Source: Azolla caroliniana
Taxonomy: Eukaryota > Plantae > Polypodiophyta
Assembly: GCA_043228905.1 (NCBI GenBank)
Contig: JBHGNT010000010.1
Coordinates: 7,750,001-7,814,000, forward strand
Direction: 5' to 3'
DNA: 64,000 nt
Shown here: piece after piece, positions 1 through 56,258 of the stretch
Layout: every line of letters starts with the position of its first letter
Numbering within the stretch: position 1 is the first letter of the stretch
Notes under the pieces: model-generated
Databases searched by the model: none
What the model was told of the DNA's origin: nothing
What the model saw: only the letters and a program-made list of their open reading frames with translations
Translations under genes and position numbers: made by a program

Positions 1-1343
1 CGTAGCCATTGACTGTCAGTGCCTTTTTGTCGTGCCGGTTCTGGTTGTGGCGTGACCTCTGTTCTCGTTGGAAGCCCTTTTTGGATTGTTGACTGCAGCG
101 ACAACTCCTACTCTTGTGGTGCTTGCTGCCCCGGTGAGGTAGGCAATTCAATTACCGGTTCTTGGACCACCGGCACTGCTGCTTCTTGCTGCACATGTAG
201 CTCTTCAATCGGTTCTAGTTGAACCGGTTCCACCTCCTTCCTTGGCTCCAGTCCCTCAGAGCGGGGTGTCGGTGCACTGTCTTTCACCGGACCCGATTCG
301 TCCCCCTTCTACTCCGCATCGCTACGCTTCTAGCAACATAGGAGGTTTTCGGCGGGGTCTTCTTCTGCCTCCTCCTCTTGGGTCCTGATATTGATCTTCA
401 TTGCCAAGGGGTCCGCCTCTTGTTCCTGCCGGCGCAGCTTGATTTTCAGAGGCCATACTAGTGGCTCTACCGATGTCTCTGTCTCTACTTGCCTCTTTCG
501 GCTAAGCGGTTCTTTCCCTTGCTCCGAGGTACTGCCCTCTTTCCAACCAGGCGTGTGCTTGGCCAGAAGTTGTTGTTGTTTTGAAGGTTTGTTAGGCGTG
601 GTCTCTGTTACTCAAACCCTCTTCTTAGTCCTTACCGGCTCCACCGGTGGCGCCAAAAGAGTCAGCCATTGAGCCATGACCACCCATAATTTCTTGTCGT
701 TCTGGACTGATTCTATCACTGTCCGCAAACAATCGGCGATGATTACTGACCAATCCACTTGCACCCATGTGTACGTAGCAATGATGAAACCGGCTTTGTT
801 CTTTAGCATTGACGGGGGTCAGGGGTACACAAACCCATACTCTTGGAGGACACGAGCCACTTCTCTGAACAGGGGGTCCTCACCGCCCTGTGTCCGGTGA
901 GCCTTACTAGCGAGGGAATACTCGCCAAAAAACTTCGTTAGTGTTTCAGGAGAAGGGTTCTCAATCGAGTAGATACCCCCTTCCGGTAGTCCGATTAGCG
1001 CGCGGATGGTTTCCTCCGTTATGACCTCCATGTCGATTTTCTGCACAACTTCTTCTGCTTCATCGTGCAGCGGTGCCTCTACTATCCTCGGGAAGCCTCT
1101 CAACCCATGTTGGTTGAACCACTTCTTGGCTGTTTCGGAAAGTGCCATAGGTTCCATCTCGTCATCTAGTTCTGCGAGGGTAGGTAGGGCCGATGTGCTT
1201 GTTTGTGCTTCTTGCGTCCGTTTGCTCACTTGTATTGTCCTTTGTACACTCAGTGCTCTGTGTTCGCGAAATGAAAGAGACTCTACGAGGAGGAGGTTTC
1301 GTGTTCCCATGCTTGGCGCCTTTCTCGATGCCCTCGCATGCAC
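1..1343 (-). pseudogene. Additional ORF downstream of Gypsy integrase (unknown function), disrupted
   Basis: ORF 819-1343 (KKWFNQHGLRGFPRIVEAPLH...FFGEYSLASKAHRT) aligns by eye with ORF 51877-52479 (RRWLVEKRLDGYIRVAEAPPH...YFGPHSSFTKAYRT). It continues via 612-809 into an acidic low-complexity region. Confidence 0.7.
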
Positions 1344-3504
1344 GTCGTGTACTATAATAGCAACTATGTGACACGTGGTGCGCTTTAACTAGGCTTTAAA
1401 TAGCCACTACACCTTTTCGAGGTGTCCGTTCGTTCCTCGCCTCTGCATGATGATCTCTTTTCTTTTTCTTTTTTTCTTTTAGTTCCAATTACCCGGTAAC
1501 CCCGGCTCCCTTGTCTGTTGTTCTTCATGGTTGCCGGCCAACTGCTTGCCATTGCCTATTTCCGCATTGTTCTCCAGTTGATGAAACAAGTTCTGAGGCA
1601 TGGGTCCATAATATGGTTTAAGTCAGAACCCATTTACCCACTTGTCCAGCACCTCACTGGCTAGCGTTCCCAGTTGATATGAGCCGTTGAACTCTCGCGT
1701 TATCCAATATGGTCCAGTCCACCAGAACTGTAGCTTCCCTGGCATCTTGCCCATCTGGGTCTGGAACACTAGTACTGGCTTGCTGATGCCAAACATCTTC
1801 TCATTACCCTTCCGGTGGAGGTCGACGAATGCTTTCCTTCGTTGTTGCTCGAGTTCCATCTGCATTAGGCTCGCTATTCGGTGCTCCTCCAGCTCGCATA
1901 GTGCTGCTAACCGGATTTTTTCCAACTCCTTCTCGCTCAGCCACTCCCAGACCCATATCCGTAAGCTTGGAATCTAGAACTCAATTGGCATCACCGCTTC
2001 GAGACCAAATGTTAACCGGAATGGTGTTGTCCGGATACTTGTTTTGTATGCCATCCGGTAAGCCCATAACGCGTTGTGCAGGTTTGTATCCCAATTGGTT
2101 CGGTTCTCATTGACAATCTTCCGGAGATTGTTCTGCAGAGTTTTATTGGTGGACTCGGCCAATACATTGGCCTGCAGGTAATAAGGGGTGCTTCACTTGT
2201 GTACGACCGCATAAAATGTTGTTAGGCTTTCCACCACATGGCCGAGGAAGTGTCCACCTTGGTCGCTGATTAATTCGATTGGACATCCATACCGGCACCA
2301 GATGTACTCGTACAGGAACTTTGTCGTTGACGTCGCGGTATTGTCCCGTAATGCCTTGGCTTCCACCCATTTTGTATAGTAATATGTGGCGACAATTATG
2401 TACCTGTTGCCGGTTCACATTTCTGATGGCTTGAATGGTCCAACGAAGTCCAGCCCCCATTTCGGGAATGGCTCTAGAGGTAGTACCGGCTGGTGCAGCA
2501 TGTGCGCTTGTTCCATTGGCTAGCCCATTCTTTGACACAGATCACATTCCTTCGTATATCAGACCGAGTCCTTTAGTGTCGTTGGCCACCATAGGCCGTT
2601 GGGCCATATTTTCCTTGCCATAGCTTCACCGGCATAATGTCCTCCAGCGACCCCACAATGCGCTTCCCGTAAAATGGTGTCTTTTTCATCACTCCAGACC
2701 GCTCACCACCATATGTCGTCCGCTCCTTTATGATACAATGTATCCTGCACTAGACAAAAGTGTCGGCTTTGCACCGCCAACCATTTACGTTCATCCCGGT
2801 TCATCTCCTCTGGGGGTAGTCCGGTGCTTAAGAACTAGTGCATATTCGTTAGCCATTTGTCCTCGTTCGCGATTGTCCCATCTATCGTGGTTTCCACTAT
2901 AATTTTAAACAATGCTGCATCCGGAAATTCATCTTGAACACCGTCACCGGTTTCTCTGGATTCTAGCTAGCTCAAGTAATCGGCAACCACATGTTGTATA
3001 CCCGGCCGATGATAGATCTCAAATTCAAATTCTTGTAATAATAATGTCCACTGGGCCAGCTTGCCGGTGAGTGATGTCTTCGAGACCAAGTATAAAAGCG
3101 TTGAATGGTCTACATGGAATGAAAACTTGCGGCCCAACAAATAATGTCGGTATTTGGTGACACTGTATATCATTCCTAGAGCTTCTCTTTCCGTAGTGGA
3201 ATAATTCCGCTCCGCCTTTGACAGCTTCCGGCTAGCATAGTACACCGGTCAGTACCACTTCGGTTCGGTAAGTTGCATGAGTACGCAGCCGATTGCAATA
3301 TCCGACGCGTCCACGAAGACATGGAACTCTTTTGACCAGTCCAGGGGTTGTACCACTGGTGCTTGTGACAGCATTACCTTGAGTGTGCGGTAAGCCTTGT
3401 CCTCTTCATCCGTCCAATTAAACGGTGTCTGGTGTACAGCTGTGTGTAGTGGCGTGGCGAGGTCTGCCAAGTACCGGAGCATCCGGCTATGCCATCGGAT
3501 CTGG
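1..3504 (-). mobile_element. Degenerate non-chromovirus Ty3/Gypsy internal region (RT end, RNase H, integrase, extra 3' ORF); continues off the left edge
   Basis: Minus-strand ORF fragments: FHVFVDASDIAIG (3249-3482) and YYASRKLSKAERNYSTTEREALG (2967-3245) = RNase H; AESTNKTLQ..LHNALWAYR (1974-2162) and GKLQFWWTGPY (1623-1925) = integrase, in Gypsy order RH then INT. Many stops and frameshifts. Fused to Copia RNase H at ~3504/3505. Confidence 0.9.
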
Positions 3505-5060
3505 CAGATCCTTCAGGAGCCTCTTGAGCCATATGGCTTCGCATGTCATGACAAGCACTCCTCGGCACTCGGCCTCCTCAACGTTGTTACTGCCGGTTGC
3601 TTCTTACTGCTCCAGGCGATCACGGAGCTTCCAAGTGAAAATGCATATCTGGATGTAGACCTACGGTCGCTGGCATTTCCGACCCAATTTGCATCCATGT
3701 AGCCGACAAGTTGTCCGGCTACACCGGCCCGATATAGAAACCCCCGATCCTTAGCGCTGCTAACATATCTCAAGATTCGATGCATGCACTGAAGGTGCTC
3801 CACGGTTGGATGCGCCATAAATTGACTAATCAATCCGGCCAGATAGTTGAGATCCGTCCAGGTGATGGTCAGATATATTAGTCTTCTTACTATCTATCAG
3901 AACCTTTTCGGGTCGCATGCCATTCTGGAGTCGGGGCGGAGCTTCACATTCCGGTCTAGTGGAGTCAAGACAGATTTGCATTCTGTCATACCGAATTTGA
4001 AGAGCATACTCAACACATAATGCCGCTAACTGATCAGTATGCCTTCCAGGGTGCGAATCATTTCAATCCCGAGGAAGTAATGAAGGTTGCCGAGATCATT
4101 CATTTCAAACGATGCCGCAAGCTGGGATTTGACGCGACCTATTTCATCCAGGTCGGGGCCGGCGATGACAAGATCATCCACATGGACAACTATGTTGACC
4201 GGTATGATCCAACCTTGTCAGATGAAAAGTGAAGAGTCCGATTTCGATGAAGCAAACCCCATCCGACGCAGTCTTTGCGTGATCTTCACGTTCCAGGCAC
4301 ATGGGGCTTGCTTGATTCCGTAGAGGGACTTCTTCAATTGGCACACTATTGATGTATTCACTCCGGACTGAAATCTGGGGGTTGAGCCATAAACACATGT
4401 TCCTCAAGATCGCCTTGCAAGAACGCTTTTATCATATCCATTTGATGTAGATGTCACCCCTTCGCCGTTGCCACCGCAAGCAAGACAAGGATGGTCATCA
4501 TCTTCACGACCGGCGCAAACGTCTCATCATAATCGATGTCGTGCTGTTGCACGTAGGCCTTGGCCACTAACTGGGCCTTATACTTGTTGACGGAGCCATC
4601 GGTGTTGCATTTAACCTTGTATACCCACCGGCAACCAATCGGCTTTACTCCTTTCAGTACATCCACTAAATCCCACGTCTCATTTTCCGTGAGTGCGTGC
4701 ATCTCTTCCTCCATAGAGGCACACCAATTTGCATCCTTCGCCGCTTCTACGTAGCTCTCCGACTCATGCACTGCCGCCACTTTCGTCATGTATGCATAAT
4801 GATGCACCATATACTCATTATACCCGTACCTCTTTATGGAATTCTTCTGGCGAGCCAATTGGCGCACTTTCTGCTCTACCAATTTCTTGGCCTTCTTGGC
4901 CGACTCAGACTTCTCTTCCGAAGGCCCTTCTTCGATCCATCTGGAATCGGATTCGCTCTTATCCGACTCGTCTCTGCCGGTGGCATATTCCGATATCTTC
5001 TTCTTCCCCTTTTCCTTGCATGTGAACCGTCTCCTCAGTTCCTTGCGCGGGGAGAGCATG

Positions 5061-5312
5061 GCACATGCACATATGCAATGTTGTCGAATATCTTAAGGTG
5101 CCTTAAATTCGGCTTCCACCCGAAATACAGCTTTCTCCGCTTCTCATCCGGCACCTGCACATATGCAATGTTGCCGAATATCTTAAGGTGCCTTAAATTC
5201 GGCTTCCGCCCGAAATACAGTTTTCTCCACTTCTCATCCGACACCTGCACATATGCAATGTTGCCAAATATCTTAAGGTGCCTTAAATTCGGCTTCCACT
5301 CGAAATATAGCT
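5061..5312. repeat. 90-bp tandem triplication inside Copia integrase
   Basis: Units at 5061, 5151 and 5241 (third partial); in-frame peptide LYFxxKPNLRHLKIFxNIAYV repeated three times in ORF 5035-5556. Confidence 0.95.
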
Positions 5313-7444
5313 CGTGTGCTGACACCTTATCCTTGATCCAGTTTTGGATGTAGATGGCCGTCCGAACCGCTTTGGCCAAGTAGAACTTGGGCATGCTCTT
5401 CTCCTTCAACATTGCTCGTGCTACCTCCACAATCGACCGATTCTTCCTTTCGGCCACACCATTTTGTTCCGGTGTGTATCTGCAACTGAATTCTCTCTGA
5501 ATTCCCATTTTGCAGATAACTGTTGAATTGGCCGGAAAAGTATTCTTTTCCGCCATCCGACCGCAAGCACTTGATCTTCCTTTCCATTTCTCGTTTGACT
5601 AAACTCTACAAGTTCCGGAAATAATCGAAAACTTCACTTTTCTTCTCGATGAGGTAGATCCACATGTGTCGGTTGTAATCGTCGATGAAGGAGACGAAAT
5701 ATTGGCTCCCCCCAAGACTAACGTTCTGTGTCGGTTCCCATATATCCGAATGTATTAGATCGAGCTTGTTACGACTCCGGTTTCTTTCGGTGGGGAATGG
5801 AAACCGGTGTTGCTTCCCAAGCTGGCAGGCTTCACATACTTGGGCCTTCCGGCCACTGAGTTTCGGCAATCCGAAAACAACTTGTTTTGATTGTAGGTCC
5901 GGAAGCCTTCGATAGTTGACGTGGCCGATCTACTTGTGTTAGAGATCGATGTCTGATTCAATCTTCTGTCCTTTGGCAAACAAGGCGGTGTCGAAGTCGT
6001 TGGTGTCAAGGATGAACATCCTCCCGTCCCGGCGCCATTGTGCAATAATCTGGCCCTCTTCTTCAATGAAGCACCCGGGGTGCTTAAACCGCACCCACAT
6101 CCCCTAGTCGACGATTTGCTCGACCGACACCAAGTTCTTTGTGATTGTCGAAACATGTAGCATGTTCATCAGTTTTCCCTTTTGTCTGACATGGCTTAAA
6201 GGGACTTCTCTGACATGCATGATGGTGAGGAGTGTCGTCTCCGGTTTTGACAACTCCCGGTGGCTCTAGCTTTTCCAGAAACGAGAACCACTCTTTGTGG
6301 CTCATCATGTGGTTAGATGCTCCGGAGTCAACGTACCACTCTTCCTCCGATCCGGAAGTGATCTTCTTCATTGAGTTCGCCTTGTGCTTCATCACAAAGG
6401 TTGACCCTTGTCCGGTCTTACCAGTACTGGATCCTTCCTATCCTTAAGCGTAGTGCGAACTTTGTCGGTTTCCTCGATTGGCCTTGTTGTATCCGGATTT
6501 GTCCAAATTGGCACGCTTCTTCCAGCACTCAATCTCTCTATGGTCATTCCATCCACAGTACCAACACTCCGTTGCAGTCTTCTCTTGACGGTTTCCAACA
6601 CCGTCTTGACTCCCCCTACTTGTGTAGGGTTCGAAACTATTGTCGGCACTTTGTGCCTCCGGTTCTACTCTTGTCGACCGCCTCCATTGTGTGCCTACCC
6701 ACCTCTTCCTCCACGCCCATGGGGTTGATCCGCCTCCATGTACAGCATCCGGTAGTCCGATTGAATGGTCCTTGACCCATTCGCGTCGATTGCATGTCAA
6801 AGAAGGACGATGGCTTCTCCCAGGTGCAAATTGCTATCCGGATTGGCCCGTACCGTTGTGCTAGACCACAGAGGCAAATTTGGATCATCTCGTCATCGTC
6901 CACTGTCACATTGATGGAATCAAGCGTGTCGCAAATTCCTTGATCTTGGTGGTGTAGTAGATGACCGACATGTCCTGTTGTTGGATACTGTTAAGCTCTT
7001 GCTGGAGCTGCAACTTCCGAGCCATGGTACTTGCGGCGAATATCTTCTGGAGATTTTCCCAGGCCTCCTTTGGTGATTTTGCATCCCTGATGTAGCCAAG
7101 TATCTGGTCGTGCACACAGGATGCAAGACAATACAATACTCTAGTCGCTCCTTGTTCCCAAACTGGGAAGTCCTTGTGTGTTAAATCCGGCGCTGCTACA
7201 TTTGCTCCTTCCATGTAGCTCCAGTATCTGTGCCCCAGCAGGTACTGGTGCATTTTATACAACCAGGACGCATAGTTGCTCCGGTCGAACTTTTCTGTTG
7301 GAAGTGAGCTCATCATGCTTCTGTCCATACCTTCTCTTTTCGGTTTGTTCTTTTACCGGTGGTTAGGGTTTGTCTTCAGAAAAAAAAAAAAAAAAAAAAA
7401 GCTTGTCAGCAACAAAGGTTCTCAACCCTCACACTCTGATACCA

Positions 7445-7878
7445 TGTCAAAGTTAATATGCAGAAGCTTTGACAAACTGGTTTATCCGGATACCAACAGA
7501 AAATAGAAAATGAAGGTTTAATGGAAGCTTAAACAACAGAGAATACACATGAGAGACAAAGAGAGTAGAAAGCATAAACTCAATTCAAAATAATAACGCT
7601 CTATACATATAGTATGCTCAGTGAGCACTTTTATACAAGTCCTTACACGGACTGACAGAAGTACTAACAAGTACTTCAATGCTCATACGAGCGCCTGACA
7701 TTGACTCCTAAAAATATGCCTACGTACTAGGCTAGATTCGCAGGCCTCTAACGGCCTACCTGTTACAATCCAATCCGGCTCCTGGTTCCGGACACCGATC
7801 CGGTTCTCTGTTCCGGATACCGATACAACTCAAGCTTATTCAGTCGATCCGGATCTGGTTGAGCTTGTCCGCTCAACA
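7445..7878 (-). repeat. 5' LTR of the minus-strand Copia
   Basis: Minus strand reads TGTTGAG...TTTGACA and is directly followed by the tRNA-iMet PBS. The right flank resumes a different Copia RT. Confidence 0.85.
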
Positions 7879-8761
7879 CACATTGTTCGGGATCGAACAA
7901 AGAAACTACTATGGTTGTCACAGGAGAACTACGTGACAAAGGTGCTCCAGAGATTCAACATGTAAGACATGAAGCCAATCAACTCGACACTGCCCACAAA
8001 CAGTAAGTTGTCCCGGAAGTCAATGTCTGAAGACAAAAGCGGAGAAGTTGAGATGATGAAGGTCCCCTATGCCTCAGTAGTCGGAAGCCTAATGTATGCA
8101 ATGGTATGTACTAGGCCGGACATTGGATACGCAGTTGGAGTCGTTAGCCAATTCATGAGCAACCCAAGCAAGGAACATTGAACGGTAGTCAAATGGATAC
8201 TTCAATTCCTGAGAGGCACCTCAAGCATGTGTCTTCAACTCGGCTCAAGTAACCCCACACTGGAAGGTTATACTCATTCAGACATGTCAGCTAATGCAAA
8301 TACTAGCCGATCCATGTTGAGATACGTAATGACCTATGTCGGGGGAGCTATATCGTGGCAGTCGAGGCTGCAGGAGGTCGTGGCACTGTCGACCACGGAA
8401 GCCGAGTATATGGCTATAGTGGAAGCCAACAAGGAAATAATATGGATGAAGGGGTTTATCCGAGAGTTGGGAATTCAGCAAGAGGAATTTTGACTCTACT
8501 GCGATAATCAGAGTGCCATCCACCTTGCGAAGAATGTCACCTACCACTCAAGGACCAAGCACATCCAAAGGAGATACCATTGGCTTCGAGAGTGAGTAGA
8601 AGAAAAGGAGTTTGCTCTGATGAAGATCCACACGGATGAAAACGGAGCAAATATGCTGACAAAGGTGTTGTTGGTCGAGAAGCTGAATGTGTGCGGACAA
8701 AGGGTCAAATTGATGAAGTACCCCATGCCGGAGTGAAGGGGGATTTTGTTGGGAAAACCGG

Positions 8762-8783
8762 TTTAGGGTTTAGGGTTTAGGGT
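8762..8783 (+). repeat. Plant telomeric repeat (TTTAGGG)3
   Basis: TTTAGGGTTTAGGGTTTAGGGT read directly. Confidence 0.95.
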
Positions 8784-9189
8784 ATTCCTCTAATTTTCCT
8801 ATGATCACCCCACCTCTTGCCCTATTATCACTCTACCCCTCCCTCTTTTAGTGATTTTCTCCTACCCCTCCCCCTTTCATTCTTCTTAATCTCACTCTAC
8901 CCTTTCCTCCTCCACTTTAATTTCCAATCTACCCTCCAATTGTTCTCAATTTAGCTTCCTACCCTTGCCCTCTCATACCCCCCTCTTGTTTTCAAAGATC
9001 TCCATACAATCTTTTCATACACACCAATATACTTCACCCTCCCTAACTCCCACATCACACACTTCTCTTCTACCCTTCCTCTCTCTTTCTCTCTCACACT
9101 CCCTTACTTGTTTTCAAATAAGCCCATAAAATCTTTTATCCCACACCAAATATATCAACCCCCATACCTCCCACATCATCAAATTTGAA

Positions 9190-9230
<41 letters not shown>

Positions 9231-9241
9231 CTTATCTTCCC

Positions 9242-9249
9242 TATATAAA
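9242..9249 (+). promoter_or_regulatory. TATA box upstream of hammerhead
   Basis: TATATAAA ending 16 nt before the start of ribozyme stem I and ~30 nt before the CTGATGA core. Confidence 0.5.
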
Positions 9250-9264
9250 CCCCTCAAATTCTAC

Positions 9265-9322
9265 ATGGTCATGTGCACTGATGAGCTCTTTAAGAGCGAA
9301 ACTAGTTTGCCACATCGACCAT
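9265..9322 (+). ncRNA. Minimal type I hammerhead ribozyme
   Basis: Core CTGATGA (9278-9284); stem II GCTC-tttaa-GAGC (9285-9297); GAAA (9298-9301); palindromic stem III AAACTAGTTT; cleavage triplet GUU (9305-9307); stem I ATGGTC-ATGTG-CA pairs with TG-c-CACAT-c-GACCAT. Confidence 0.88.
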
Positions 9323-9410
9323 TCCTTTGTATTACCTTTTAAGTTTGTTAATATGAATTAGTTTTTAGTGTATCTCTCTCTCTAAACTTTGTACATATAT
9401 ATCTTTCTCA

Positions 9411-9468
<58 letters not shown>

Positions 9469-9573
9469 ACTCATATTTCTCTTCTTTCACTCTCATTCTC
9501 CCTCACATACACCCACCCACCGATTGTATACCGCTCGCACTCCTTGTATCGACCTCACGGTCTAAAACTCACG

Positions 9574-9593
9574 AACCCTAAACCCTAAACCCT
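9574..9593 (-). repeat. Plant telomeric repeat, reverse orientation (CCCTAAA)n
   Basis: AACCCTAAACCCTAAACCCT read directly. Confidence 0.93.
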
Positions 9594-10182
9594 CCCTCCA
9601 GATGGGAAGATTATGAGCCAAATCAAATCGAGAGCTGACAGAAAATTCAGCCGAGGCCGAAAATCAACAAATCGATTTAATAGCCGATTCAGGAGGCTAT
9701 ATTTGTAAATAGTCTGAATGTGCCCATTGGGACTATATTTGTAAATACCCCTGAAAGTTGTATTAGTATAAATATAACTAGGGCAAACCCGATGAGATAG
9801 AATCATTATAGTGAATAATTAGTGCAGTTGTATATGGTTGTATAGTTGGAGAAGGTAGTTGCCTATATAACTAGACAAGAGTGAGAGTGAGAGTGAGAGT
9901 GAGAGTGGGTGTAACTCTGTAGCCGTTAGTCAAGGAAGAAGAGGTCAAGGTCGTTGCCTTGAATCCTCTTGTTGTACTCCTCCCCTTATAGTGATTCAGT
10001 TTGGAGTTTGTGGACTCCACATGGTTTTTCCCATTCGAGTTTTCCACATTAGAAATGCACGTGTCTCTATACTTTCTGTTTTCTGATTTCTGTTTTCTGT
10101 TTTGTCTGTACACTATCTTTCAAGTTCTTTGCACCCGCATTCTCATACGAAGAAACCAGTTGTGGTTGGATCGATTCTCAAG

Positions 10183-15107: not shown

Positions 15108-17505
15108 ATGGCCACTCTCAATCACCGCAGAGCAGAGGAACCCCCTTCAACTAACCCTAACCCTAACCCTAACCCTCCCCCCTCCTCTGTTTCTTCCTCC
15201 ATGAAAGCTTTGGAGAAACCCCTGCCCATGCGAATGCGCCGTGCCCTGGATTACGCCCTCCGCGAGCAACGCCCCCTCTTCGTGATCCTCGGCATGCTTC
15301 TCTCCTCCGCGATCTTCCTCATTCTTGCTCATACTTCCCCATACTCTGATTCTTCTTCCCAACAGGGACAACTGGTAGCATCGTATAAGAGAGGGGATCC
15401 GTCTGCTCTGATGCATCCAGAGATCCATGGCTATATGCCCGGCCACTTTGTAGGGCATGGTCTGAAGCCGGGTGCCAAAGTTCCCCTTGGTCTGAAGAGG
15501 AAAACCCTTCGTGTTCTGGTTACAGGAGGGGCTGGATTCGTGGGTAGCCACCTTGTGGATCGCCTCATCGAACGTGGCGATAGTGTCATCGTTGTCGACA
15601 ATTTCTTTACAGGCCGCAAGGAGAACGTTCTGCGACACCTCAAGAACCCGCAGTTCGAGCTCATCAGGCATGATGTGGTAGAACCCCTCATGCTTGAAGT
15701 GGACCAGATCTATCATCTCGCTTGCCCGGCATCACCTGTCCACTACAAATATAACCCTGTCAAGACTATTATATCCATTTTTGCCAGCAATAAGAGTGTA
15801 TGTGTATGTGATTATACATAAAAATCATATGCATTTTGCCTCTTCCTTTTGCATCATCAAAGTATATCTATGGGGTATTTTGAATGTTATGCATGTGTAT
15901 AGTTATGTGATGCATGTGCATATGTTTTATCTACAAAGGAATTTCCTATTACATGCCCTTGTTCCTTGACTACTTATATACAAGACAAATGTGGTGGGCA
16001 CTTTGAATATGCTTGGTCTGGCAAAGAGAGTCGGTGCGCGATTCCTGCTTACGAGCACAAGCGAAGTTTATGGAGATCCATTGGAGCATCCGCAGAGAGA
16101 GACATATTGGGGCAATGTCAATCCTATTGGTATACTTCTTCATCCATTGACCTAATCCACATACACATGGGTAAATATTATTATCCCAAATTTCTGAATT
16201 GATAGGCCAATATCTCTACTTGTTCTTTTCATATAGGTGTTCGGAGTTGCTATGATGAAGGTAAAAGGACGGCGGAAACTCTCACAATGGATTATCATCG
16301 TGGTGCAAATGTTGAGGTATGCAGTTTACTCGCTGAACCATGGCTATTTCTTAGAGCTGGAATTCACACAAAACTACTAACAAATATTGGAGTAGGCAAA
16401 AAGATTCACTTTTTACCATGGGTAGTTCTGAGAACTAAAAAAAACCCTCGCTTTTGCACAGGTTCGCATTGCACGCATCTTCAACACATACGGTCCAAGA
16501 ATGTGTCTTGATGATGGACGGGTGGTTAGCAATTTTGTTGCTCAGGTTTAGAACATTTCCTTCTCTTACCATGTATAAAAATTCCAGGTTAAAGCCTTTT
16601 GATTGCTTGACTCAATGTTTTTTTTGAATAACGTATATATATGTGGGTAGGCTTTGAGGAAAGAACCTATGACCGTTTACGGCGATGGAAAGCAAACAAG
16701 GAGTTTTCAATTTGTTTCCGATCTTGTAAGCAGAGTAGTAACTTTGAAATAATTTCTCTTTCTTTTCCTTGGGTTATATTTTGCCACTAATTTCTTATGT
16801 GGATCCTTCTTTCCTAGGTTGAAGGATTAATGCGTCTCATGGAGAGTGACCACATTGGCCCTTTCAATCTCGGGAATCCTGGAGAATTCACCATGCTAGA
16901 ACTGGCCGAGGTAACTTCATGGTTTTGTCACTACTTTAATTATGATCATGTATGTTAGTAGCTACTTATGGTACTTCTTTACTAGTAGTTATGGTCATGT
17001 TAGTAGTAGTTACTTAAGGTTTTCTTTACTAGTTAGGCATAGTTATGCTGGTATTTGTCTCATTTTTCTTCTCTTGATGAGGGAGTTTTTGTGTTATAAT
17101 TAGGTTGTGAAAGAAGTTATCGACCCGAATGTTATTAGCTACTTATGGTCTTCTTTACTAGTAGTTATGGTCATGCTAGTAATAGTTACTTAAGGTTTTC
17201 TTTACTAGTTAGGCATGGTTATGCTGGTATTTTTCTCAATTGTTCTTCTCTTTGATGACAAGGGAGTTTTGTGTTATAATTAGGTTGTGAAAGAAGTTAT
17301 TGATCCGAATGCTAAGATCGAGTTTAGGAAGAATACCGAGGATGATCCGCATATGAGGAAGCCGGATATCACAAAGGCAAAGAATTTGCTAGGGTGGGAA
17401 CCAAAGGTCTCATTGAAAGCAGGTCTTCCTATGATGGTCGATGATTTTCGACAGAGGATATTTGGTGATATTAAGGGAGGAGTAGGGAGTGAGGGTACAA
17501 TGTAA
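15108..17505 (+). CDS. UXS: UDP-glucuronic acid decarboxylase (UDP-xylose synthase), membrane-anchored type, 454 aa
   Basis: Exons 15108-15770, 15982-16129, 16237-16316, 16462-16545, 16651-16725, 16818-16910 and 17284-17505 splice in frame (1365 nt). N-terminal TM segment ([17 protein letters not shown]), GGAGFVG Rossmann motif, [10 protein letters not shown], catalytic [15 protein letters not shown]. Confidence 0.97.
15771..15981 (+). other. U12-type AT-AC intron (UXS intron 1)
   Basis: 5' end ATATCCAT, branch site TTCCTTGAC (15962-15970), 3' end ...ATAC. Removal gives the conserved NPVKTI|KTNVVGT junction. Confidence 0.93.
16952..17311. repeat. ~180-bp tandem duplication spanning the UXS intron 6/exon 7 boundary
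   Basis: TTATAATTAG|GTTGTGAAAGAAGTTATyGAyCCGAATG occurs with acceptor G at 17103 and at 17283, each preceded by the same ~150 bp of intron. Confidence 0.93.
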
Positions 17506-44255: not shown

Positions 44256-45622
44256 CCCTTTAATGTTCCTCCAAAATGGCCCTGATGTTTGGTTCTGCTA
44301 CGGTGTCCGAGTCCGGGGACGGCGTAGGGCCCGTAGGTGCGTCGTTGTGTGGTTCCCTTGCTTGGTCGGGAGGGCTTCCCATGGTGTCGTTGGCGTCCTG
44401 TGTGGGAGGTCCGGGTTCTACTGGCTCTTCTTGGGCTATTGGTATTGGTTCAGCCATCCACGGGCTTGCGGTAGGTCGTGGCTCTGTTTCGTCCGTCATT
44501 TCCTCCGTGATGTTGGTCGTCGGTGTATGCTCTAGAGAGTGGGGTTGCGGTTCCTCTTAGTCTGAAACGTCCTCCGTGATGTCGGACGTAAGCGTATGCT
44601 CCGGTGGGTGAGGTTCCTCTTGGTCGGTGGTTTCGTTGTTTGGTATTGCGGGGGACTCCGCTCGCCATTCTGTGCTGTTCACCGTAGTGGTAATTTCTGG
44701 TGACATGGCCTAAGGTTCCTCTTGTTCGGCAGTATCCGAAATTGGTATCGCGATGGATTCCTTGTTTGTTCGTGTGCTGCCGGCTTGCATGTTCTAGTAA
44801 AACATGTCCTCTTGACTTTCGCCAAAATCATCTAGTAGTTGCACGAGTTCCTCGGAATGTTGGTCCGCTAGCGTGCGATAGTCCTGCGTTAGGTCCTCGC
44901 GTACTGCCGCAATGCTTTCCTCATTGAGTTTGTAGAACCCTAGGCCGTCTTTCCTTCGGTTCTCCTAGTCCGCCTGGTACGTATGCAATTCCGCCGCTTG
45001 TGCAGCCCACGCCATCCATCCTTTGTCTAGCGCCGATTTTAATTGCGCAGTAAACCTCTCCCGATTCGTTTGCAGAAGGATGCAAACGTTGTCTGTTATG
45101 GCTTGGCAACGGTTGCGTGCTTCTTCTAAAGATTTCTTGAGGTTTGCAATTTCTTCTTGACTAACCGCCGCCGCTTCCTCATAAGTGCTCCTCATCCTGC
45201 GTAGAGCTGAGATTCCTTCGAATGTAGTTCTTCCAGTTTTCCCATTTCATTGTTTAGGCAGATTTCTAGCTAATGTCTCCTCTCTTGTTCTCCAACCAGC
45301 TGCTCGTCGAACCATGCTTTCTTCTCCAATAAGGCCCGGAGTCCCGCGATTGCCACTTCCGATTTTTTCACTTCCTCCCGTAATTGGGCATTTTCTTCTT
45401 TTGTCTGGGTGTGCTGTGTTGTCTCCGCTGCGAGTTTCTCTTCAAGGGTCTTCACTGCCTTTCGGCCGTTGGCCCGGATGTTCTTTTCTCTATCCGAGGA
45501 CTGGTGAAGTTCGGCGCAAAGACGGTCAATCTCTAATTCCGCCAATTGCACGGCTTGTTTCAGTTTCGAGGCAATGGCGGTCTGAGCTTCAATTTCTTCC
45601 CTTAGGGCTTTGATGGTGTTGG

Positions 45623-48600
45623 TGTTGGGATTACGGTCCCTTTCGGATGGGATGGTCGGATATCGGAGATGAATGCCGACAAGCCCGGTTTCGGTTTCGG
45701 ATCCGGATGACGAAGACCCCGGTTTCGGTGCCGGATGACGAATGTCCCCGGAGAGCGATCCGGATGCAGGGACATATCCGTGAATATGTTCGCTATGGGC
45801 CTCTGAGGCTATAGTGGTAAATAGCCCAAAGTCATATAAGTATAAATATGACTTAGGGCAAACAGTTTTACTGTTGCTTCTCATTTTTCTGTTTTTCCAC
45901 TTTAGAGGAGTGAAGAGAGAGCAGCCGTGAGAGAGATAGAGCGTGAGAGAGGAAGAGGTCGACGCCTCTGTGTAATACCGCCGTCTGTGGCGAAGAAAGC
46001 GAGCTCAAGGTCGTTGCCTTGCAGCTCGCCATTTTATATTTCTCTGTGCATAGTTTGGTTTGGAGTCTCGCACTCCCGTGGTTTTTCCCGTATAGGGTTT
46101 TCCACGTTAATCCCTGTGTATCGTGTCTTTCTCTGTATTTCCTATTTTCTGCTCCATTAATTCGCGATTTCTCGGTTCTGGCCGAGTGGTGAAGGTGAAT
46201 CGAAGCGTTGATTCCCAACAAACTGGTATCAGAGCGAGTTGCTGCAGAAAATGGAAGGCGGCGGCAGCGGGCAGCCGGGGATGATGGTGCTGAATGCGCA
46301 GAATTACGCCGATTGGAAGATCAAGATGGAGGATCTTTTGATTGTTCGGGACCTGTACGAACCGATTGACAGGTCGGAAATACCGAAGGGTGTACTTGAG
46401 TCGGAGTGGAAGCTCCTGAACCGGAAAGCCGTAGCGACGATCCGACAATATGTCGATGTAAGCGTCCTACAACATGTGGCGAACGACACCAACGCATATG
46501 AGATGTGGAAGAAGCTGTCGGGCCTCTACGAGAGGAAGAATGCGTTGAACCGGACCTCCCTGATGAGGAAGATAGTGAATCTCAAGTACCGGGACGGCGA
46601 GAGTATGGTGGAACACGTAAGCACGTTCATGGGATTCGTGAATCAGCTTGCGGCGATCAAGTTCCCGTTGGAGGATGCAATGCAAGCCATCATCCTGATG
46701 TGTACATTGCCGGAAAGCTGGGAGAACTTGGTGGTGACTCTCAGCACCTCCTGCACAGAAGATAACTTGTCCTTACAAACGGTAAAGACAAGTATTTTGA
46801 ACGAAGAAGCGCGTCGGAGAGATAAAGAACCGGCCTCCGACTCGAAGGCGTTGCTTACCGAATCGGATCGGGGAAGACAATGGAACCGGAGTCCGCAAAG
46901 ACGGGAGAAGTCGGGGACCCGATCGCAGTCAAGAGGAAGGCCCACATGCTTCCACTGTGGGAAGCCGGGGCACTTCCGAAAGAATTGTCGGCATTACCGA
47001 AAAGACAACGGAGCCGACGACACCGATTCGAAGAAGTCACCGGAGAGAAACGGTGCATACCGGGGAGCCACGGACCGGAGAGGTTCGGATCGGCGAGGGC
47101 AGGACCGGAAAGGAACGACGGCACTCGCGGCAAGTGAAGAGGAGATCATGCTCATCACCGAAGAAGGTGAACTAAACATTGCCGGCGATGAGACGACCTG
47201 GGTGGTCGATTCCGGAGCATCGTTCCACCTGACCCCGGAAAGAAGATACTTTTCATCCTACACAGCCGGTGAGCATGGCTGTGTTCGGATGGGAAATGAA
47301 GGTACGTGCCGGATTGCCGGCATCGGAGACGTGTGGTTGACAACCCCGACCGGATGCAAAATGCTGCTGAAGGATGTTCGACACGTTCCGGAGGTTCGAT
47401 TGAACCTGATTTCGGCCGGGAGGCTAGACGATGAAGGCTACACAGGTAGCATCCGGAACGGCGTAATGAAGTTCAGCAAGGGGAGCCTGATAGTGGCTCG
47501 GGCTCGGAAAGTCAACACACTGTACTTGATGAATGCCCGATTATGTCCGGAAGAGCTGAACGTGGCAGCCGACACTGCCGGTGAGCTGTGGCACAAGAGA
47601 CTGTGCCACATGAGTGAGAAGGGGATGAAGAGGCTTGCAGAAGACAACCTCATTCCAGTGAAGCATGTGCACCTGGAGAAGTGCACCGATTGCCTGGCCG
47701 GTAAGCAGAACCGAGCCTCCTTCCACTCAAGGCCACCGACGAGACGTAGCGCACCATTGGAGTTGGTGCACACTGATGTGTGTCAGGTAGAAACGAAGTC
47801 ACATGGCGGAGCCCAGTACTTCGTAACATTCATTGATGATCACAGCCGGAAGCTGTGGACGGCACCGTTGAAGACAAAGGACCAAGTGTTGTGCGTCTTC
47901 AAAGAACTCCACGCGAGAGTGGAAAGGGAATCCGGCAAGAAGCTGAAAGCGATATGAGCGGATAATGGAGGGGAATACCGGGGGCAGTTCCAGGAGTACT
48001 GTCGCTCGAAGGGAATCCGACTCGAGTTTACTGTGCCGAAGACGCCGGAACTGAACGGGCTGGCCGAGAGGACGAACCGGACCATAATGGAGAGGGTCCG
48101 GAGTATGCTGGCACATGCGGAATTACCCAAGGGGTTTTGGGCTGAGGCGATGTCAACGGCGACATACGTGATAAACAGATCACCCTCAGTACCTTTGGAC
48201 GGAGACACGCCGCAGAGAGTGTGGACCGGTAGGGAAGTATCCTACCGGCATCTGAAGGTGTTCGGGTGTCTCGCATACGTGCATGTGGCAAAGGACCGGA
48301 GAGGAAAGCTAGATCCAAAGACCCGGCCATGCATATTCCTCGGTTACGGCGACGACGAGTTCGGCTACCGAGTATGGGACCCGGTCGACAAGAAGATATT
48401 CAGGAGTCGAGACATCATCTTCATGGAGGACAAGACACTCGCCGACTGGGAGTCGGAGAAGAAGATGAAGAGCTCCAAGTCGACCGGTGAGAATCAACTC
48501 TACGAGGAGCAGTCCCGACCGGCAAGGGACCGGTTAGCACTCGAGGATCCGGCCGAAGACGGTGAAGAAACAGAACCGGCCGAAGAAGATGAAAATGATA

Positions 48601-53764: not shown

Positions 53765-54651
53765 ATTTAGTTGAATTTATATTTCTATCATTGTACTTTT
53801 ACATGTAAATTCTCATACATGAGAGCTAAAATGAGTGACATGGTTATCATGCACCACATGTAATACACAAGCGCCAAATGGCAAACATGCATTTTATGCA
53901 TGTCTTGTACCCTCACATGCATCATATGCATGGGAGCATCTATAAAAGAAGGAAGGGGGAGGAGAAAAAACGGTTTTTTTTGGGTTATGAAATTAAGAAG
54001 AAGAAATTCGTTATCAAATTGATCGTGTAACTCGTTTCTTAAATCTAAAGATAAAAGTTCAATCAATCCCTCTCAATCGTTTAATCTCAACTTCTCTCTT
54101 TCCCAATCTATCTTAAGTACTTTCTCGCTAAAGCTTGCGCCAACGCTTTTACCGACTTTAAATCCTTCCGGTCTAGAACCCCGACGATTCTGCCTCACGA
54201 TTCGTGCGTAGTGATGGATCTTCACGACATAATCCGACGGTCACCTCGTCGTCGCTAGTGCCGCCGCCGGATGCCGTCGGTTATCGGTGCCTCGCCGGAT
54301 GTCGTCGTCTCACCGACGCCGGATGCTGCCGGATACCGTCACCTTGCCGTCGTCGGATTGTCGTCGGATGTCGGTGTCTTACTGGCGCCGGATGGCGCCG
54401 GATCACCGACTCCATCGCCGGTCCAGTTTTGGTTGGCCAAAACCTTTTACGAGTAGCTAGCCCACCTCCACTCTTAGTTCAAGTTACCTTGAACTCTCTA
54501 TGCTCCACATATAGACACAAAGATAATATCTTTTGCTCTACCTTATATATGATGAGAGCCGTATTTATCGTGCCTATGTGGGATATCTCACAATTTTCTC
54601 TTTTCCTTTCACAAACTTTATACCCTCATATCTTGACATTTAGTGAGGAAT

Positions 54652-56049
54652 TCATATATGATAAAACGCGCATGTTCCAAGGAACCTTCGAACCTCCGTT
54701 TGGTTTTCGCATTCTTCTTTCATGTCTTGGATTGAGTTCACTTTGGATGGCGAGGGCTTCCGGTCGTATGCTCCACACAAGTGACCTACCACCAAGATCT
54801 CCGGTTGCCCGAATGCAGATTTTTCTCCCGAAAATGTCAAATTCGCATCTTCGAGCCTTTGAAGCACCTTCTCGCAATCTTTCATATGATCCGCAATGAA
54901 CTTTCTACAACCTTCCTTATCTTTCGATTCATCTTTCTCCTCATCTGAACATCCTTTTATCGGAATATCATCCAAGAATGGCATCGTGATGTCTGGGATG
55001 CAATCCTTCAAGACTTTATTCATGGCATTCACCATATGAGCCACCGAGTTCGTTGCGCCTTGGGGTAAGGTACACATCCGCACAAGCCCGATCGGAGTCC
55101 TCATGGTTGTAATGTCCCGACTATCGATCGCCAATTGGAATTGGTCGCCAATGGAGTAGATGGACCGGCCCGCAAACGCTTCGGCAAATTCGTCCACACT
55201 CGAACCGATTCCGGCATTTCGAATTGTCACCTTGTTGACGGGTTGAAGATCTTGGATGAATCGCAATAATCCATTCTTCTTCGGCACCGTGAACCACCTA
55301 TTGGAATAAGGAGCATTCGACGGTTCTAGAATTCCCATACTCACCTTCTCCTTTAAGAGCTCGATTAGCTTCGGAAGGTGTGCTCTCGGAACCGGTATCG
55401 GTTTCAAATTCCAAGGCACATGAGGCACCGTGAAGATCACCATCGGCTCTATAACCTTTGGGTTAGCGCATCCGATTTCTCGTGGGAAGAATGCGAAAGC
55501 CTTCCCATGTCTCTCAAGCATATCGCGAAACATTCGCTCCTCTTTAGGGAGAAGGAAATCCTCCTTTCCAACTCGTAGCTTCCCCTTCGTCTCTTTGGTG
55601 AAGACATGACCTATCTTCTTCGGATCTCTTAAGCTTGGATCGTTAGCGACTTCCTTCATCTTTTGCCAGCTATCTTCTGGTAGCGGAACCGCAACTGGCT
55701 TGATCTTCTTATCCACCGTTTTATATTTCGTGTTGATGTCAGCTTCCTTCATCGAGATGCCACGACGGTATTCATCGATGATAGCGTACATGTTGACGGA
55801 GTTAACCGAAATCACGCGTTGGTTGTGAAGATAGCTCAAGTCCACGACGTCCTCGATTTCACCGATGGTGTCGTTAAATGAGGCTTCTTCCATAATATGA
55901 GTCACGAACTCTCCTTCTTCTATTATGTTTTCTTCTTTCAGCATCTTCTCGAATTCTTGTATCCAGTGCTTGTGCTTCTTGTCGGGTAGTACTAGTTTAC
56001 ATGCGCCACTAGGTGTGACACATGTTGCTTCTCCTCGCAATCCACGCAC
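54652..56049 (-). pseudogene. Gypsy reverse transcriptase (truncated pol)
   Basis: ILEPSNAPYSNRWFTVPKKNG..LRFIQDL, LPQGATNS, PFLDDI. Small internal deletion; RNase H and integrase absent. Confidence 0.9.
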
Positions 56050-56258
56050 TCTTCTTTCTTGTGGGGTCTTGTGATTGCTCGGACTATTTGTGTCCCATGC
56101 TTCAATAGTTCGCTCTAAAAATCCGAGGATTCGCCTCCGAGACTATCTCGATTCCTTTCATGATTGGCTCGCACCGTTAGGAATTGGACCGATCTTTGGT
56201 TGTCAAGACTCTTTACTCGTGCGAAGGCTGCTCCATTATCGAACACTTTGGTCTCCAT

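What the first reader, a model, noticed from the sequence alone, without database searches (positions are those of the whole stretch)
8762..9593. Telomere-capped, ribozyme-bearing mobile insertion: candidate non-autonomous Penelope-like element at a telomerase-healed break
Seen: an ~830-bp ORF-less insert splits a Copia LTR 15 bp from its start with no real TSD (one shared T). Both target 3' ends continue in correct telomeric register: top strand ...CCGGT+TTAGGGTTTAGGG, bottom strand ...GAGGGA+GGGTTTAGGG. The G-rich strands therefore point inward from both sides. Inside are a pyrimidine-rich region with an ~80-bp imperfect direct repeat (~8977 and ~9098), (CT)n tracts, a TATA box and a hammerhead. 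The ribozyme-sense strand ends in CCCUAAA repeats. Known: minimal type I hammerheads mark Penelope-like element pseudo-LTRs, and endonuclease-deficient PLEs (Athena, Coprina) use C-rich telomeric stretches to prime on chromosome ends. Inference: an RNA that anneals to telomere repeats added at an internal break and is reverse-transcribed in place, so it integrates interstitially without its own endonuclease. The alternative is a family with telomeric terminal inverted repeats.
Basis: partly seen in the sequence, partly recalled or inferred. Interest (0 to 1): 0.9.

Follow-up and report, generated by a model that had tools for sequence, protein, structure and literature searches.

The report
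Ribozyme retroelement bridging telomere-capped break
A shortened copy of a many-copy, gene-less, ribozyme-carrying mobile element sits in a fern-like plant's Copia repeat exactly where the DNA once broke, and both broken ends carry short telomere repeats, a rare natural trace of a break patched by telomere-type synthesis plus reverse transcription.

Summary
An 831-bp ORF-less insert (8762-9592) splits a Copia LTR 15 bp from its start. No target base is lost and at most one T is duplicated. It is bounded by (TTTAGGG)3 on the left and CCCTAAACCCTAAACCC on the right. A well-formed minimal type I hammerhead lies at 9265-9322.

The insert is not a complete element and not a transposon with telomeric inverted ends. 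Seven metagenome contigs hold the same family. It is a non-coding unit of about 1.6 kb, arranged in tandem or as pseudo-LTRs, with variable 5' truncations and a fixed 3' end equal to window 9572. None of those copies has telomeric repeats at its junctions.

The window copy is therefore a 5'-truncated 3' fragment (8834-9572) plus 51 nt of unique sequence. The telomeric tracts belong to the target's broken ends, and their polarity fits only that reading. The canonical 3' end abuts one G-strand tract, as expected if that 3' end primed reverse transcription.

Its claim of an intrinsic CCCUAAA tail is not supported.

The junctions occur in three independent read sets under two organism labels, so this is not an assembly artefact. 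The scan had already found this element family on other DNA of the same genome. Unchecked notes there report similar telomeric 5' junctions.

The parts
8747..8761 (+). First 15 nt of the host Copia 3' LTR (TGTTGGGAAAACCGG), the left half of the target. The Copia pol C-terminus and a purine tract lie just upstream.
   Evidence: the sibling Copia LTRs start TGTTGGGATTACGG|TCCC; sibling LTR contigs.
8762..8782 (+). (TTTAGGG)3, a G-strand telomeric tract that continues the left target 3' end. The first T may belong to the target.
   Evidence: It is absent from the sibling LTRs and from the family copies.
8783..8833 (+). 51 nt of unique CT-rich sequence between the telomeric tract and the start of family homology. 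It is either filler or a strongly diverged element part.
   Evidence: Identity to the family copies is 0.28-0.43. The local alignment score lies within the shuffle range. Read depth is only 8-14, against hundreds to thousands further in.
8834..9572 (+). Family segment: the 5'-truncated 3' part of a multi-copy non-coding hammerhead retroelement, ending at the family's canonical 3' terminus.
   Evidence: BLAST to L001-L007 at 82-89% identity always spans insert positions 73-811. In L004 the element ends at the same nucleotide against unrelated flank. Loose ends appear at 8834 and 9572 in the reads.
8955..9230 (+). Imperfect internal tandem duplication with a period of about 121 nt. The copy number of this segment varies between family members.
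   Evidence: There are extra copies in L001, L002 and L004.
9243..9254 (+). TATA-like box (CTATATAAACCC), about 12 nt upstream of the hammerhead.
   Evidence: The block 9233-9262 is 100% identical in all family copies. Promoter function is inferred, not tested.
9265..9322 (+). Minimal type I hammerhead ribozyme motif. Helix III is a single base pair with a palindromic CUAG loop. The predicted cleavage site lies after U9307.
   Evidence: A compensatory pair change at 9289/9293 is seen. The core 9275-9310 is shared by many contigs with unlike flanks.
9412..9465 (+). (CT)n microsatellite of variable length. A second (CT)n tract lies at 9190-9228.
   Evidence: One X21 contig replaces 9309-9513 with 26 nt.
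9533..9572 (+). Conserved 3'-terminal block of the family, a candidate recognition or initiation site for the reverse transcriptase.
   Evidence: Identity is 0.96 across copies. Depth is high up to about 9580 and then falls roughly 40-fold.
9573..9575 (+). GAA junction. The AA is shared between the family terminus (..CTCAC-AA) and the telomeric register. The G is extra.
9576..9592 (-). GGGTTTAGGGTTTAGGG on the bottom strand, a G-strand telomeric tract that continues the right target's 3' end (..GGAGGGA).
   Evidence: Contigs X1 (9521-9710) and X2 (9491-9721) span this junction.
9593..9900 (+). The rest of the host Copia LTR (TCCCTCCAGATGGG...), the right half of the target.

Best explanation
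The insert is a 5'-truncated copy of a multi-copy, non-coding retroelement of Penelope-like organisation. It lodged in a double-strand break in a Copia LTR, and both 3' ends of that break had been extended with telomeric G-strand repeats.

Shown:
- The target is interrupted between GG and TCCC with nothing lost and no TSD.
- Both telomeric tracts run 5'->3' toward the break on the target's own strands. That is the polarity of capped chromosome ends, not of a capped insert.
- The element's canonical 3' terminus abuts the right-hand G-strand tract, while its 5' end is truncated.
- The telomeric repeats are not family sequence.

Inferred:
- Telomerase most likely added about 3 repeats to ..CCGG(T) and about 2.5 repeats to ..GGAGGGA. 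An RT copying a C-rich RNA is the alternative.
- The right-hand ..GGGTT-3' end then primed reverse transcription of the element's RNA. It did so either through the terminal AA or through a read-through CCCUAAA tail from a telomere-resident source copy. The RT was supplied in trans by an endonuclease-less PLE.
- The cDNA stopped early or switched template (the 51 unique nt). It was then joined to the left-hand G-tract by a template jump onto that overhang, by annealing of a few non-templated bases, or by end joining.
- This copy has a single dimer-dependent hammerhead and no partner copy, so it is probably inert now.
For: - Empty site and precise interruption.
- Telomeric tracts, their rarity and their inverted polarity.
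- Family structure: L001-L007 show an A-B-A(-B) arrangement and 5' truncations at four different unit positions. The 3' end falls at the same nucleotide in L004 and in the window, and no telomeric repeats occur at those junctions.
- Non-coding.
- Hammerhead with a PLE-type palindromic loop 3 and a compensatory change.
- The hammerhead block and the 3' terminal block are the most conserved parts and the most abundant in reads.
- Both target 3' ends are G-rich (CCGG(T) and GGAGGGA) and enter the telomeric register through one shared base.
- The junctions are present in three runs.
- Both telomeric tracts are still perfect although the copy differs by 11-18% from its relatives. Most of that divergence therefore predates the insertion.
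- Literature: EN-less PLEs attach to G-rich telomeric overhangs (PMC8557442, PMC6431247). PLE hammerheads are type I with a short palindromic helix III (PMC4209133). Telomerase inserts telomeric repeats at double-strand breaks in vertebrates (PMC7215372, PMC2246262).
Against: - This is a single locus. I could not examine other telomere-flanked copies. Recurrence rests only on unchecked notes from the same scan.
- The family consensus has no C-rich tail, and one relative (L004) ends against ordinary flank. Telomeric priming is therefore not the family's only route.
- No PLE RT was seen in the window or in the seven contigs, so the RT source is assumed.
- The 51 nt at 8783-8833 are unexplained.
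- The canonical 3' terminus rests on two copies plus a drop in read depth.
- Telomerase cannot be told apart from an RT copying a telomeric RNA template on sequence alone.
Confidence: 0.6

Rival explanations
1. Two-step origin. The break was first repaired with telomeric additions on both ends joined head-to-head, giving (TTTAGGG)3(CCCTAAA)2.5. Later this hairpin-prone palindrome broke again, and the element inserted at its centre by endonuclease-independent retrotransposition.
For: Telomerase-made interstitial telomeric inserts at break sites are documented, including one locus with head-to-head tracts (PMC7215372). The element sits between the two tracts. Family copies elsewhere insert without telomeric repeats.
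Against: It needs two independent breaks at the same nucleotide, with no loss of repeat register. Two G-rich overhangs are not complementary, so a direct head-to-head join is not favoured. The element's 3' end sits exactly at a G-strand 3' end, as expected for priming.
Confidence: 0.13
2. DNA-level filler. The whole block, or the element part of it, was copied or captured as DNA from a (sub)telomeric array of such elements during break repair, by synthesis-dependent strand annealing or end joining. No reverse transcription took place at the site.
For: In other EN-less PLEs, subtelomeric arrays interleave the elements with short telomeric tracts (PMC6431247). From general knowledge, plants often patch breaks with filler DNA copied from elsewhere. 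The 51 unique nt look like filler.
Against: Telomere-attached arrays give telomeric tracts in direct orientation on both sides of an element, not inverted. Capture would not be expected to end exactly at the family's canonical 3' terminus. Depth over 8783-8828 is the same low figure as over the unique junctions, so there is no sign of a donor copy.
Confidence: 0.12
3. The telomeric tracts were made not by telomerase but by the retroelement RT copying telomeric RNA. On the right, the template was a CCCUAAA read-through tail of an RNA from a telomere-resident source copy. On the left, the template was the same kind of tail in an abortive priming event, or a G-rich telomeric transcript reached by a template jump.
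For: PLE RTs are the sister group of telomerase RTs, and EN-less PLEs use C-rich tails (PMC8557442, PMC6431247). An unchecked note reports a hammerhead followed by C-strand repeats 694 kb away. The left tract is exactly three whole repeats.
Against: No family copy seen here carries such a tail. This rival does not change the main reading of a break bridged by reverse transcription from telomeric 3' ends.
Confidence: 0.12
4. A DNA transposon or MITE family whose terminal inverted repeats happen to be telomeric repeats.
For: A perfect 19-nt inverted pair lies at the two ends.
Against: There is no TSD. Seven related copies have no such ends, and instead show variable 5' truncations and continue into a further 890 nt of family sequence.
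Confidence: 0.01
5. Assembly or chimeric-read artefact.
For: None was found.
Against: Contigs from runs of three samples in three studies span the left or the right junction with 1-4 mismatches.
Confidence: 0.01

Closest known systems
Endonuclease-deficient Penelope-like elements (Athena/Terminons of bdelloid rotifers; Coprina of fungi, protists and plants such as Selaginella)
   Same: The element's 3' end is joined to the 3' end of a telomeric G-strand. Copies are 5'-truncated and border on telomeric repeats. They carry a type I hammerhead and form tandem or pseudo-LTR arrays. No endonuclease-type TSD is present (PMC8557442, PMC6431247, PMC4209133).
   Different: The site is interstitial, inside an LTR, not a chromosome end. 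The two telomeric tracts are inverted, whereas the telomere-addition model predicts direct tracts. The family consensus has no C-rich tail. The hammerhead lies about 265 nt from the repeats rather than next to them. There is no RT ORF.
Non-autonomous hammerhead retroelements (retrozymes; PLE-associated non-coding repeats)
   Same: They are non-coding, multi-copy, have a hammerhead in each repeated unit, and are presumably mobilised in trans (PMC4918200, PMC7761336).
   Different: Plant retrozymes have complete LTRs with type III hammerheads, a PBS/PPT and a 4-bp TSD. This family has a type I minimal hammerhead, a truncated upstream repeat, no TSD, and a defined 3' end that is not at the cleavage site.
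Telomerase-mediated insertion of interstitial telomeric repeats at double-strand breaks (primates, rodents, horse)
   Same: Telomeric repeats appear in an otherwise contiguous sequence when compared with an empty site. They are in register with the target's 3' end through minimal homology, and little or no target sequence is changed (PMC7215372, PMC2246262, PMC8537989).
   Different: Here both ends carry a tract, the tracts are inverted, and a retroelement cDNA bridges them rather than the ends being joined directly. The organism is a plant with TTTAGGG repeats.
Endonuclease-independent LINE-1 insertion at breaks and dysfunctional telomeres (from my own knowledge of Morrish et al. 2002 and 2007; not read here)
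   Same: A retroelement RNA is reverse-transcribed from a pre-existing 3' end, including telomeric ends. There is no TSD and the copy is 5'-truncated.
   Different: That is a different element class (non-LTR LINE), seen in cultured repair-deficient mammalian cells. This is a natural germ-line event in a plant and involves a non-autonomous PLE-like element.

Membership tests
Hammerhead ribozyme (type I, minimal PLE-type) | Catalytic core: CUGAUGA, GAA, the A15.1-U16.1 pair and a non-G residue at position 17 | tested here: met
   9278-9284, 9298-9300, A9301/U9306 and U9307. My descriptor finds 1 site in the window and 0 in 300 shuffles.
Hammerhead ribozyme (type I, minimal PLE-type) | Helix II with G10.1-C11.1, supported by covariation | tested here: met
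   The 5-bp helix is 9285-9289 with 9293-9297. The pair 9289/9293 is U-A here and C-G in all 8 hammerheads of L001-L007. Both forms occur at matched depth in four runs, with no half-changed form listed.
Hammerhead ribozyme (type I, minimal PLE-type) | Open helix I (type I topology) and a 1-bp helix III with a palindromic loop, allowing dimer formation | tested here: met
   Helix I is 9265-9277 with 9308-9322, about 14 bp with two bulges. ACUAGU is self-complementary. Helix I never varies in the copies seen, so there is no covariation for or against it.
Hammerhead ribozyme (type I, minimal PLE-type) | Reaches the Rfam gathering score | tested here: not met
   The best match is Hammerhead_3 at 19.9 bits against 48.5, E = 0.25. 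There are no matches in L001-L007 at E <= 0.1. Minimal PLE hammerheads are poorly covered by these models.
Hammerhead ribozyme (type I, minimal PLE-type) | Self-cleavage | not testable with these tools
   This needs in vitro transcription of monomer and dimer constructs.
Penelope-like elements (PLE) | PLE-type reverse transcriptase ORF | tested here: not met
   No ORF exceeds 58 aa in the insert. In the family contigs there are only low-complexity open frames of 126 aa or less. At best this is a non-autonomous derivative.
Penelope-like elements (PLE) | Pseudo-LTR or partial tandem organisation with a hammerhead in the repeat | tested here: met
   L004 reads A(492-688)-B-A(1-688) followed by flank. 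L001, L002, L005, L006 and L007 are A-B-A(-B) arrays. Each A carries a hammerhead.
Penelope-like elements (PLE) | Variable 5' truncation with a constant 3' end | tested here: met
   The 5' ends fall at A645, A492, A369 and B465, and at 8834 in the window. The 3' end falls at the same nucleotide in L004 and the window. The 3' end rests on two copies.
Penelope-like elements (PLE) | Mobilisation by a PLE RT that shares the terminus | not tested
   No PLE RT sequence was available in the window or the loci. Unchecked notes report EN-less PLEs in this genome.
Telomere-attaching EN-less PLEs (Athena/Coprina) | A short reverse-complement telomeric stretch is part of the element's 3' end, immediately downstream of the hammerhead | tested here: not met
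   In 9 family 3' ends, position 9572 is followed by unit part B or by unrelated flank, never by CCCTAAA. Here the hammerhead lies about 265 nt upstream of the repeats.
Telomere-attaching EN-less PLEs (Athena/Coprina) | The element's 3' end is joined to the 3' end of a telomeric G-strand | tested here: met
   The bottom strand reads ..GGAGGGA-GGGTTTAGGGTTTAGGG-TTC followed by the antisense of the element's 3' end.
Telomere-attaching EN-less PLEs (Athena/Coprina) | Terminal or subterminal chromosomal location | tested here: not met
   Both flanks are the two halves of one LTR, so the site is interstitial.
TIR DNA transposon / MITE | Terminal inverted repeats shared by family copies, plus a TSD | tested here: not met
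Plant LTR-type retrozyme | Two complete LTRs with type III hammerheads and a 4-bp TSD | tested here: not met
   The topology is type I. The upstream repeat is truncated in L004, L001 and L007. No TSD is seen in the window or in L004. A PBS/PPT was not searched for systematically.
Telomerase-made interstitial telomeric insert at a break | Telomeric repeats are absent from the empty site and continue a target 3' end in register | tested here: met
   The enzyme itself cannot be identified from sequence.

The most novel reading that the evidence does not exclude
In this fern-like plant, endonuclease-less Penelope-like elements and their non-coding hammerhead parasites routinely integrate inside chromosomes. 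They use double-strand breaks whose ends telomerase has briefly extended. The telomeric 3' end primes reverse transcription, and the second telomere-capped end is then captured. This leaves inward-pointing G-strand tracts. It would be a telomerase-coupled, endonuclease-independent integration and repair pathway, and it would explain how EN-less PLEs spread away from telomeres.
Probability: 0.3. Interest if true: 0.8.

Novelty: new variant of a known kind. Interest (0 to 1): 0.55.

Why it matters
EN-less Penelope-like elements are thought to be confined to chromosome ends because they need a free telomeric 3' end. How some of them, such as the EN-less families of Selaginella and Chara, reach internal sites is an open question (PMC8557442).

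This locus is a clean natural footprint. The target is intact to the nucleotide. Telomeric G-strand sits on both broken ends. The canonical 3' end of a PLE-like element lies at one of them. That is what one would expect if an internal break, transiently treated as a telomere, can serve as an integration site.

If a genome-wide census shows the pattern is recurrent, it would link telomerase action at breaks, retroelement-mediated break repair and the intrachromosomal spread of EN-less retroelements. It would also extend telomerase-made interstitial telomeric repeats, documented so far mainly in vertebrates, to plants. As a single locus it remains an informative but anecdotal molecular fossil.

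Tried and rejected
1. Other copies in the window: none. BLAST gave only microsatellite matches.
2. The host Copia's own 5' LTR was not found in the window. I used the sibling Copia at 45.6-51 kb and read-derived siblings as the empty site instead.
3. Rfam found nothing at gathering level in the window and only a sub-threshold Hammerhead_3 match. It found nothing in the family contigs, and no tRNAs were found there.
4. I tried to reach further copies through spurious ORF 'proteins' that cover the 3' block. The first search was swamped by low-complexity words. The second found no candidate.
5. Scans of bacterial/archaeal genomes and of viral contigs with the 3' block were blank, as expected.
6. 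Homology of 8783-8833 to the family was rejected. The score lies within the shuffle range and identity is 0.28-0.43.
7. A telomere-like stretch after the second hammerhead of L006 (ACCCTAACACCCCC..) does not match even a relaxed telomeric pattern. I dropped it.
8. Gladyshev & Arkhipova 2007 and Arkhipova et al. 2017 are not held in the library. Their content is cited only as summarised in PMC8557442 and PMC6431247.
9. The depths are summed contig depths, not copy numbers. I use them only to show which parts are multi-copy.
10. X21 is only guessed to be RNA. Its contigs span the junctions between the A and B parts of the unit, but I do not count them as proof of transcription.
Full report
**1. 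Observation**

Window 8762-9592 is an 831-bp insert. It begins with (TTTAGGG)3 (8762-8782) and ends with CCCTAAACCCTAAACCC (9576-9592). The two ends form a perfect 19-nt inverted pair with 791 nt between the arms. They are the only telomeric 14-mers in the 64-kb window: 3 matches against 0.05 expected, and 0 of 100 shuffles reach 3. No ORF in the insert exceeds 58 aa.

The + strand is pyrimidine-rich. It has two (CT)n tracts and a 157-nt imperfect tandem duplication with a period of about 121 nt. It also has a TATA-like box and, at 9265-9322, a hammerhead motif.

**2. The target**

Upstream of 8747 lie the C-terminus of a Copia pol and a purine tract. TGTTGGG at 8747 starts the 3' LTR. A related Copia in the same window (45.6-51 kb) has gag, integrase and RVT_2 domains. 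Both of its LTRs start TGTTGGGATTACGG|TCCCTTTCGGATGGG.

Contigs of sibling LTRs in public runs read GGGAAA-CAGG-TCCCTCCGGATGGG and join 8756/8758 directly to 9593. The insert therefore lies exactly between ..CCGG and TCCCTCC. No target base is lost and at most one T is duplicated. Sibling LTRs do not contain the segment natively.

**3. Not an artefact**

Independent runs hold contigs that span the junctions:
- X1 covers 9521-9710 with 1 mismatch.
- X2, from another study, covers 9491-9721 with 4 mismatches.
- X5, under another organism label, covers 8703-8849 with 2 mismatches.

The insertion is thus shared by samples under two organism labels. Either it predates their separation or the two are very close.

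**4. The hammerhead**

The motif has these parts:
- CUGAUGA at 9278-9284.
- Helix II: GCUCU/AGAGC with a UUA loop.
- GAA at 9298-9300.
- A15.1-CUAG-U16.1 and U17, with predicted cleavage after 9307.
- Helix I: 9265-9277 paired with 9308-9322, open at the end, so the topology is type I.

The fold energy is -20 kcal/mol, z = -3.75. My descriptor finds this one site in the window and none in 300 shuffles.

Helix III is a single base pair capped by a palindromic loop (ACUAGU). Cervera and de la Pena describe this architecture for hammerheads that act as dimers in PLEs (PMC4209133).

The helix II pair 9289/9293 is U-A here and C-G in all eight hammerheads of the related contigs. Both forms occur at matched depth in all four runs. 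This is a compensatory change.

The core 9275-9310 is shared by many contigs whose flanks differ (loose ends at 9275 and 9310). Rfam scores the motif below threshold: Hammerhead_3 at 19.9 against 48.5 bits.

**5. The family**

A scan of metagenome contigs with the hammerhead core returned seven ENA contigs, L001-L007. BLAST of the insert against them always covers insert positions 73-811, which is window 8834-9572, at 82-89% identity.

In those contigs this segment ('A', 688 nt in L005) alternates with a further conserved segment of about 890 nt ('B', starting AATTTGTAGTAATTTCTATGGAGG). The arrangement is A-B-A(-B). A contig of run X21 from the window's own organism label continues from 9572 into the same B sequence.

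The unit has no real ORF, no Rfam family and no tRNA.

The 5' ends of copies fall at different unit positions: A645 in L001, A492 in L004, A369 in L007, and within B in L005. L004 ends at the nucleotide equal to window 9572, against unrelated flank and with no evident TSD. No telomeric repeat, even a relaxed one, lies at any of these boundaries.

Along the window copy, conservation against the contigs is as follows:

| Window region | Identity to family copies |
|---|---|
| 9233-9382 (TATA-like box, hammerhead and the following 60 nt) | 0.90-1.00 |
| 9533-9562 (3' terminal block) | 0.96 |
| 8783-8833 | 0.28-0.43, not family sequence |

Read depth shows the same picture. It is hundreds to thousands over 9252-9392 and 9487-9580, only 8-14 over 8782-8828, and falls about 40-fold after 9580. 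These are summed contig depths, not copy numbers.

**6. What it is**

The insert is a 5'-truncated 3' fragment of a multi-copy, non-coding, hammerhead-bearing retroelement. The family's organisation is that of Penelope-like elements: pseudo-LTR or partial tandem arrays, variable 5' truncation and a fixed 3' end. In the window this fragment is preceded by 51 nt of unique sequence.

The telomeric tracts are not part of the element.

**7. How it got there**

Polarity is the key. On the top strand the left target end ..CCGG(T) continues as TTTAGGG repeats. On the bottom strand the right target end ..GGAGGGA continues as GGGTTTAGGGTTTAGGG. G-strand running 5'->3' toward the break on both sides is the polarity of two capped chromosome ends. 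A linear DNA with its own telomeres would show the opposite arrangement.

Both target 3' ends are G-rich and enter the telomeric register through one shared base. The element's canonical 3' terminus (..CTCAC, then G, then AA shared with the repeat) abuts the right-hand G-strand, and its 5' end is truncated. This is the footprint of reverse transcription primed by that telomeric 3' end.

EN-less PLEs (Athena, Coprina, Terminons) use the same logic at real telomeres (PMC8557442, PMC6431247). From my own knowledge, endonuclease-independent LINE-1 does so at breaks and dysfunctional telomeres.

Joining to the left-hand tract is inferred. It could be a template jump of the RT onto that G-overhang, annealing of a few non-templated bases to ..GGG-3', or end joining. 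The 51 unique nt would be filler from this step.

Telomerase is the simplest source of the tracts, since it is known to insert telomeric repeats at breaks in vertebrates (PMC7215372, PMC2246262, PMC8537989). An RT copying a telomeric RNA cannot be excluded.

Both tracts are still perfect (38 nt) although the copy differs by 11-18% from its relatives. That divergence is therefore mostly subfamily difference and not decay after insertion.

**8.

- The CCCUAAA 'tail' is not intrinsic to the family. Nine family 3' ends continue into B or into flank.
- The hammerhead is about 265 nt from the repeats, not adjacent as in Terminons.
- The element is a fragment, not a complete unit.
- No RT-bearing partner was seen here.

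**9. Rivals**

- A two-step origin: a head-to-head telomeric scar that later received the element.
- DNA-level filler copied from a subtelomeric array.
- Tracts made by an RT from telomeric RNA rather than by telomerase.

None of these is excluded. The first two are less economical, for reasons given under Rival explanations. The TIR-transposon and artefact readings are refuted.

**10. Earlier scan notes**

All are AI notes and I checked none of them. They say this genome is a fern-like non-seed plant that carries this kind of non-coding hammerhead element in many places (s1-508913, s1-497272, s1-504006, s1-504014). So the scan had found the family before on other DNA.

Several first-reader notes report telomeric repeats at PLE 5' junctions with polarity opposite to the Athena model, and break-repair-like junctions (s1-517002, s1-510725, s1-501229, s1-514421). 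One reports a hammerhead with C-strand repeats 694 kb downstream (s1-508936). I could not read those sequences. They are leads for the census proposed under the next steps, not support.

**11. Verdict**

This is a known kind of element (a non-autonomous PLE-like hammerhead retroelement) in an unusual and informative junction context, so I rate it a new variant of a known kind. As a single locus it is of moderate interest. It would rank high if the pattern proves systematic.

Noticed in passing
window 45622-51000: A near-intact sibling Copia with both LTRs, starting at 45622 and 50337. Its ORFs carry gag, zinc knuckle, integrase, SH3-like and RVT_2 domains. It is 74.6% identical to the pol end of the host Copia and served as the in-window empty site.
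   Followed up: partly
window 54200-60600 (- strand): A Gypsy-type element: ORFs with RVT_1, integrase core and H2C2 zinc-binding domains, plus a weak DUF4100 match.
   Followed up: no
window 5060-5329: Three tandem copies of a 90-nt unit (94% and 78% identity) inside the degenerate region upstream of the host Copia pol end. The host Copia's 5' LTR was not found in the window.
   Followed up: no
window 15108-15821 (+): An open frame whose C-terminal part matches the N-terminus of NAD-dependent epimerase/dehydratase (PF01370, E = 6.5e-13). It is probably the first exon of a host gene.
   Followed up: no
window 9309-9513; run X21 contig: One family copy in a run guessed to be RNA replaces this 205-nt stretch, which includes the (CT)n tract, with 26 nt. 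It then continues 571 nt beyond 9572 into unit part B. Another X21 contig runs from upstream sequence into 8834-8916. If X21 is RNA, the family is transcribed across unit boundaries, as expected for tandem or circular forms.
   Followed up: partly
L001, L002, L004 (A part, unit positions ~163-345): The segment that is duplicated in the window copy (period of about 121 nt) is present in an extra copy in these relatives. This internal repeat therefore expands and contracts within the family.
   Followed up: partly
L004 1594 and 3465: A complete insertion of the family (truncated A, B, full A; 1872 nt) has no recognisable target-site duplication and no telomeric repeats. The family may therefore insert without an endonuclease-type staggered cut in general.
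   Followed up: partly
window 1-10000: The base composition is strongly skewed. AT skew reaches -0.28 and GC skew is about -0.1 to -0.16, with GC 44-51% against about 35% in the middle of the window.
   Followed up: no
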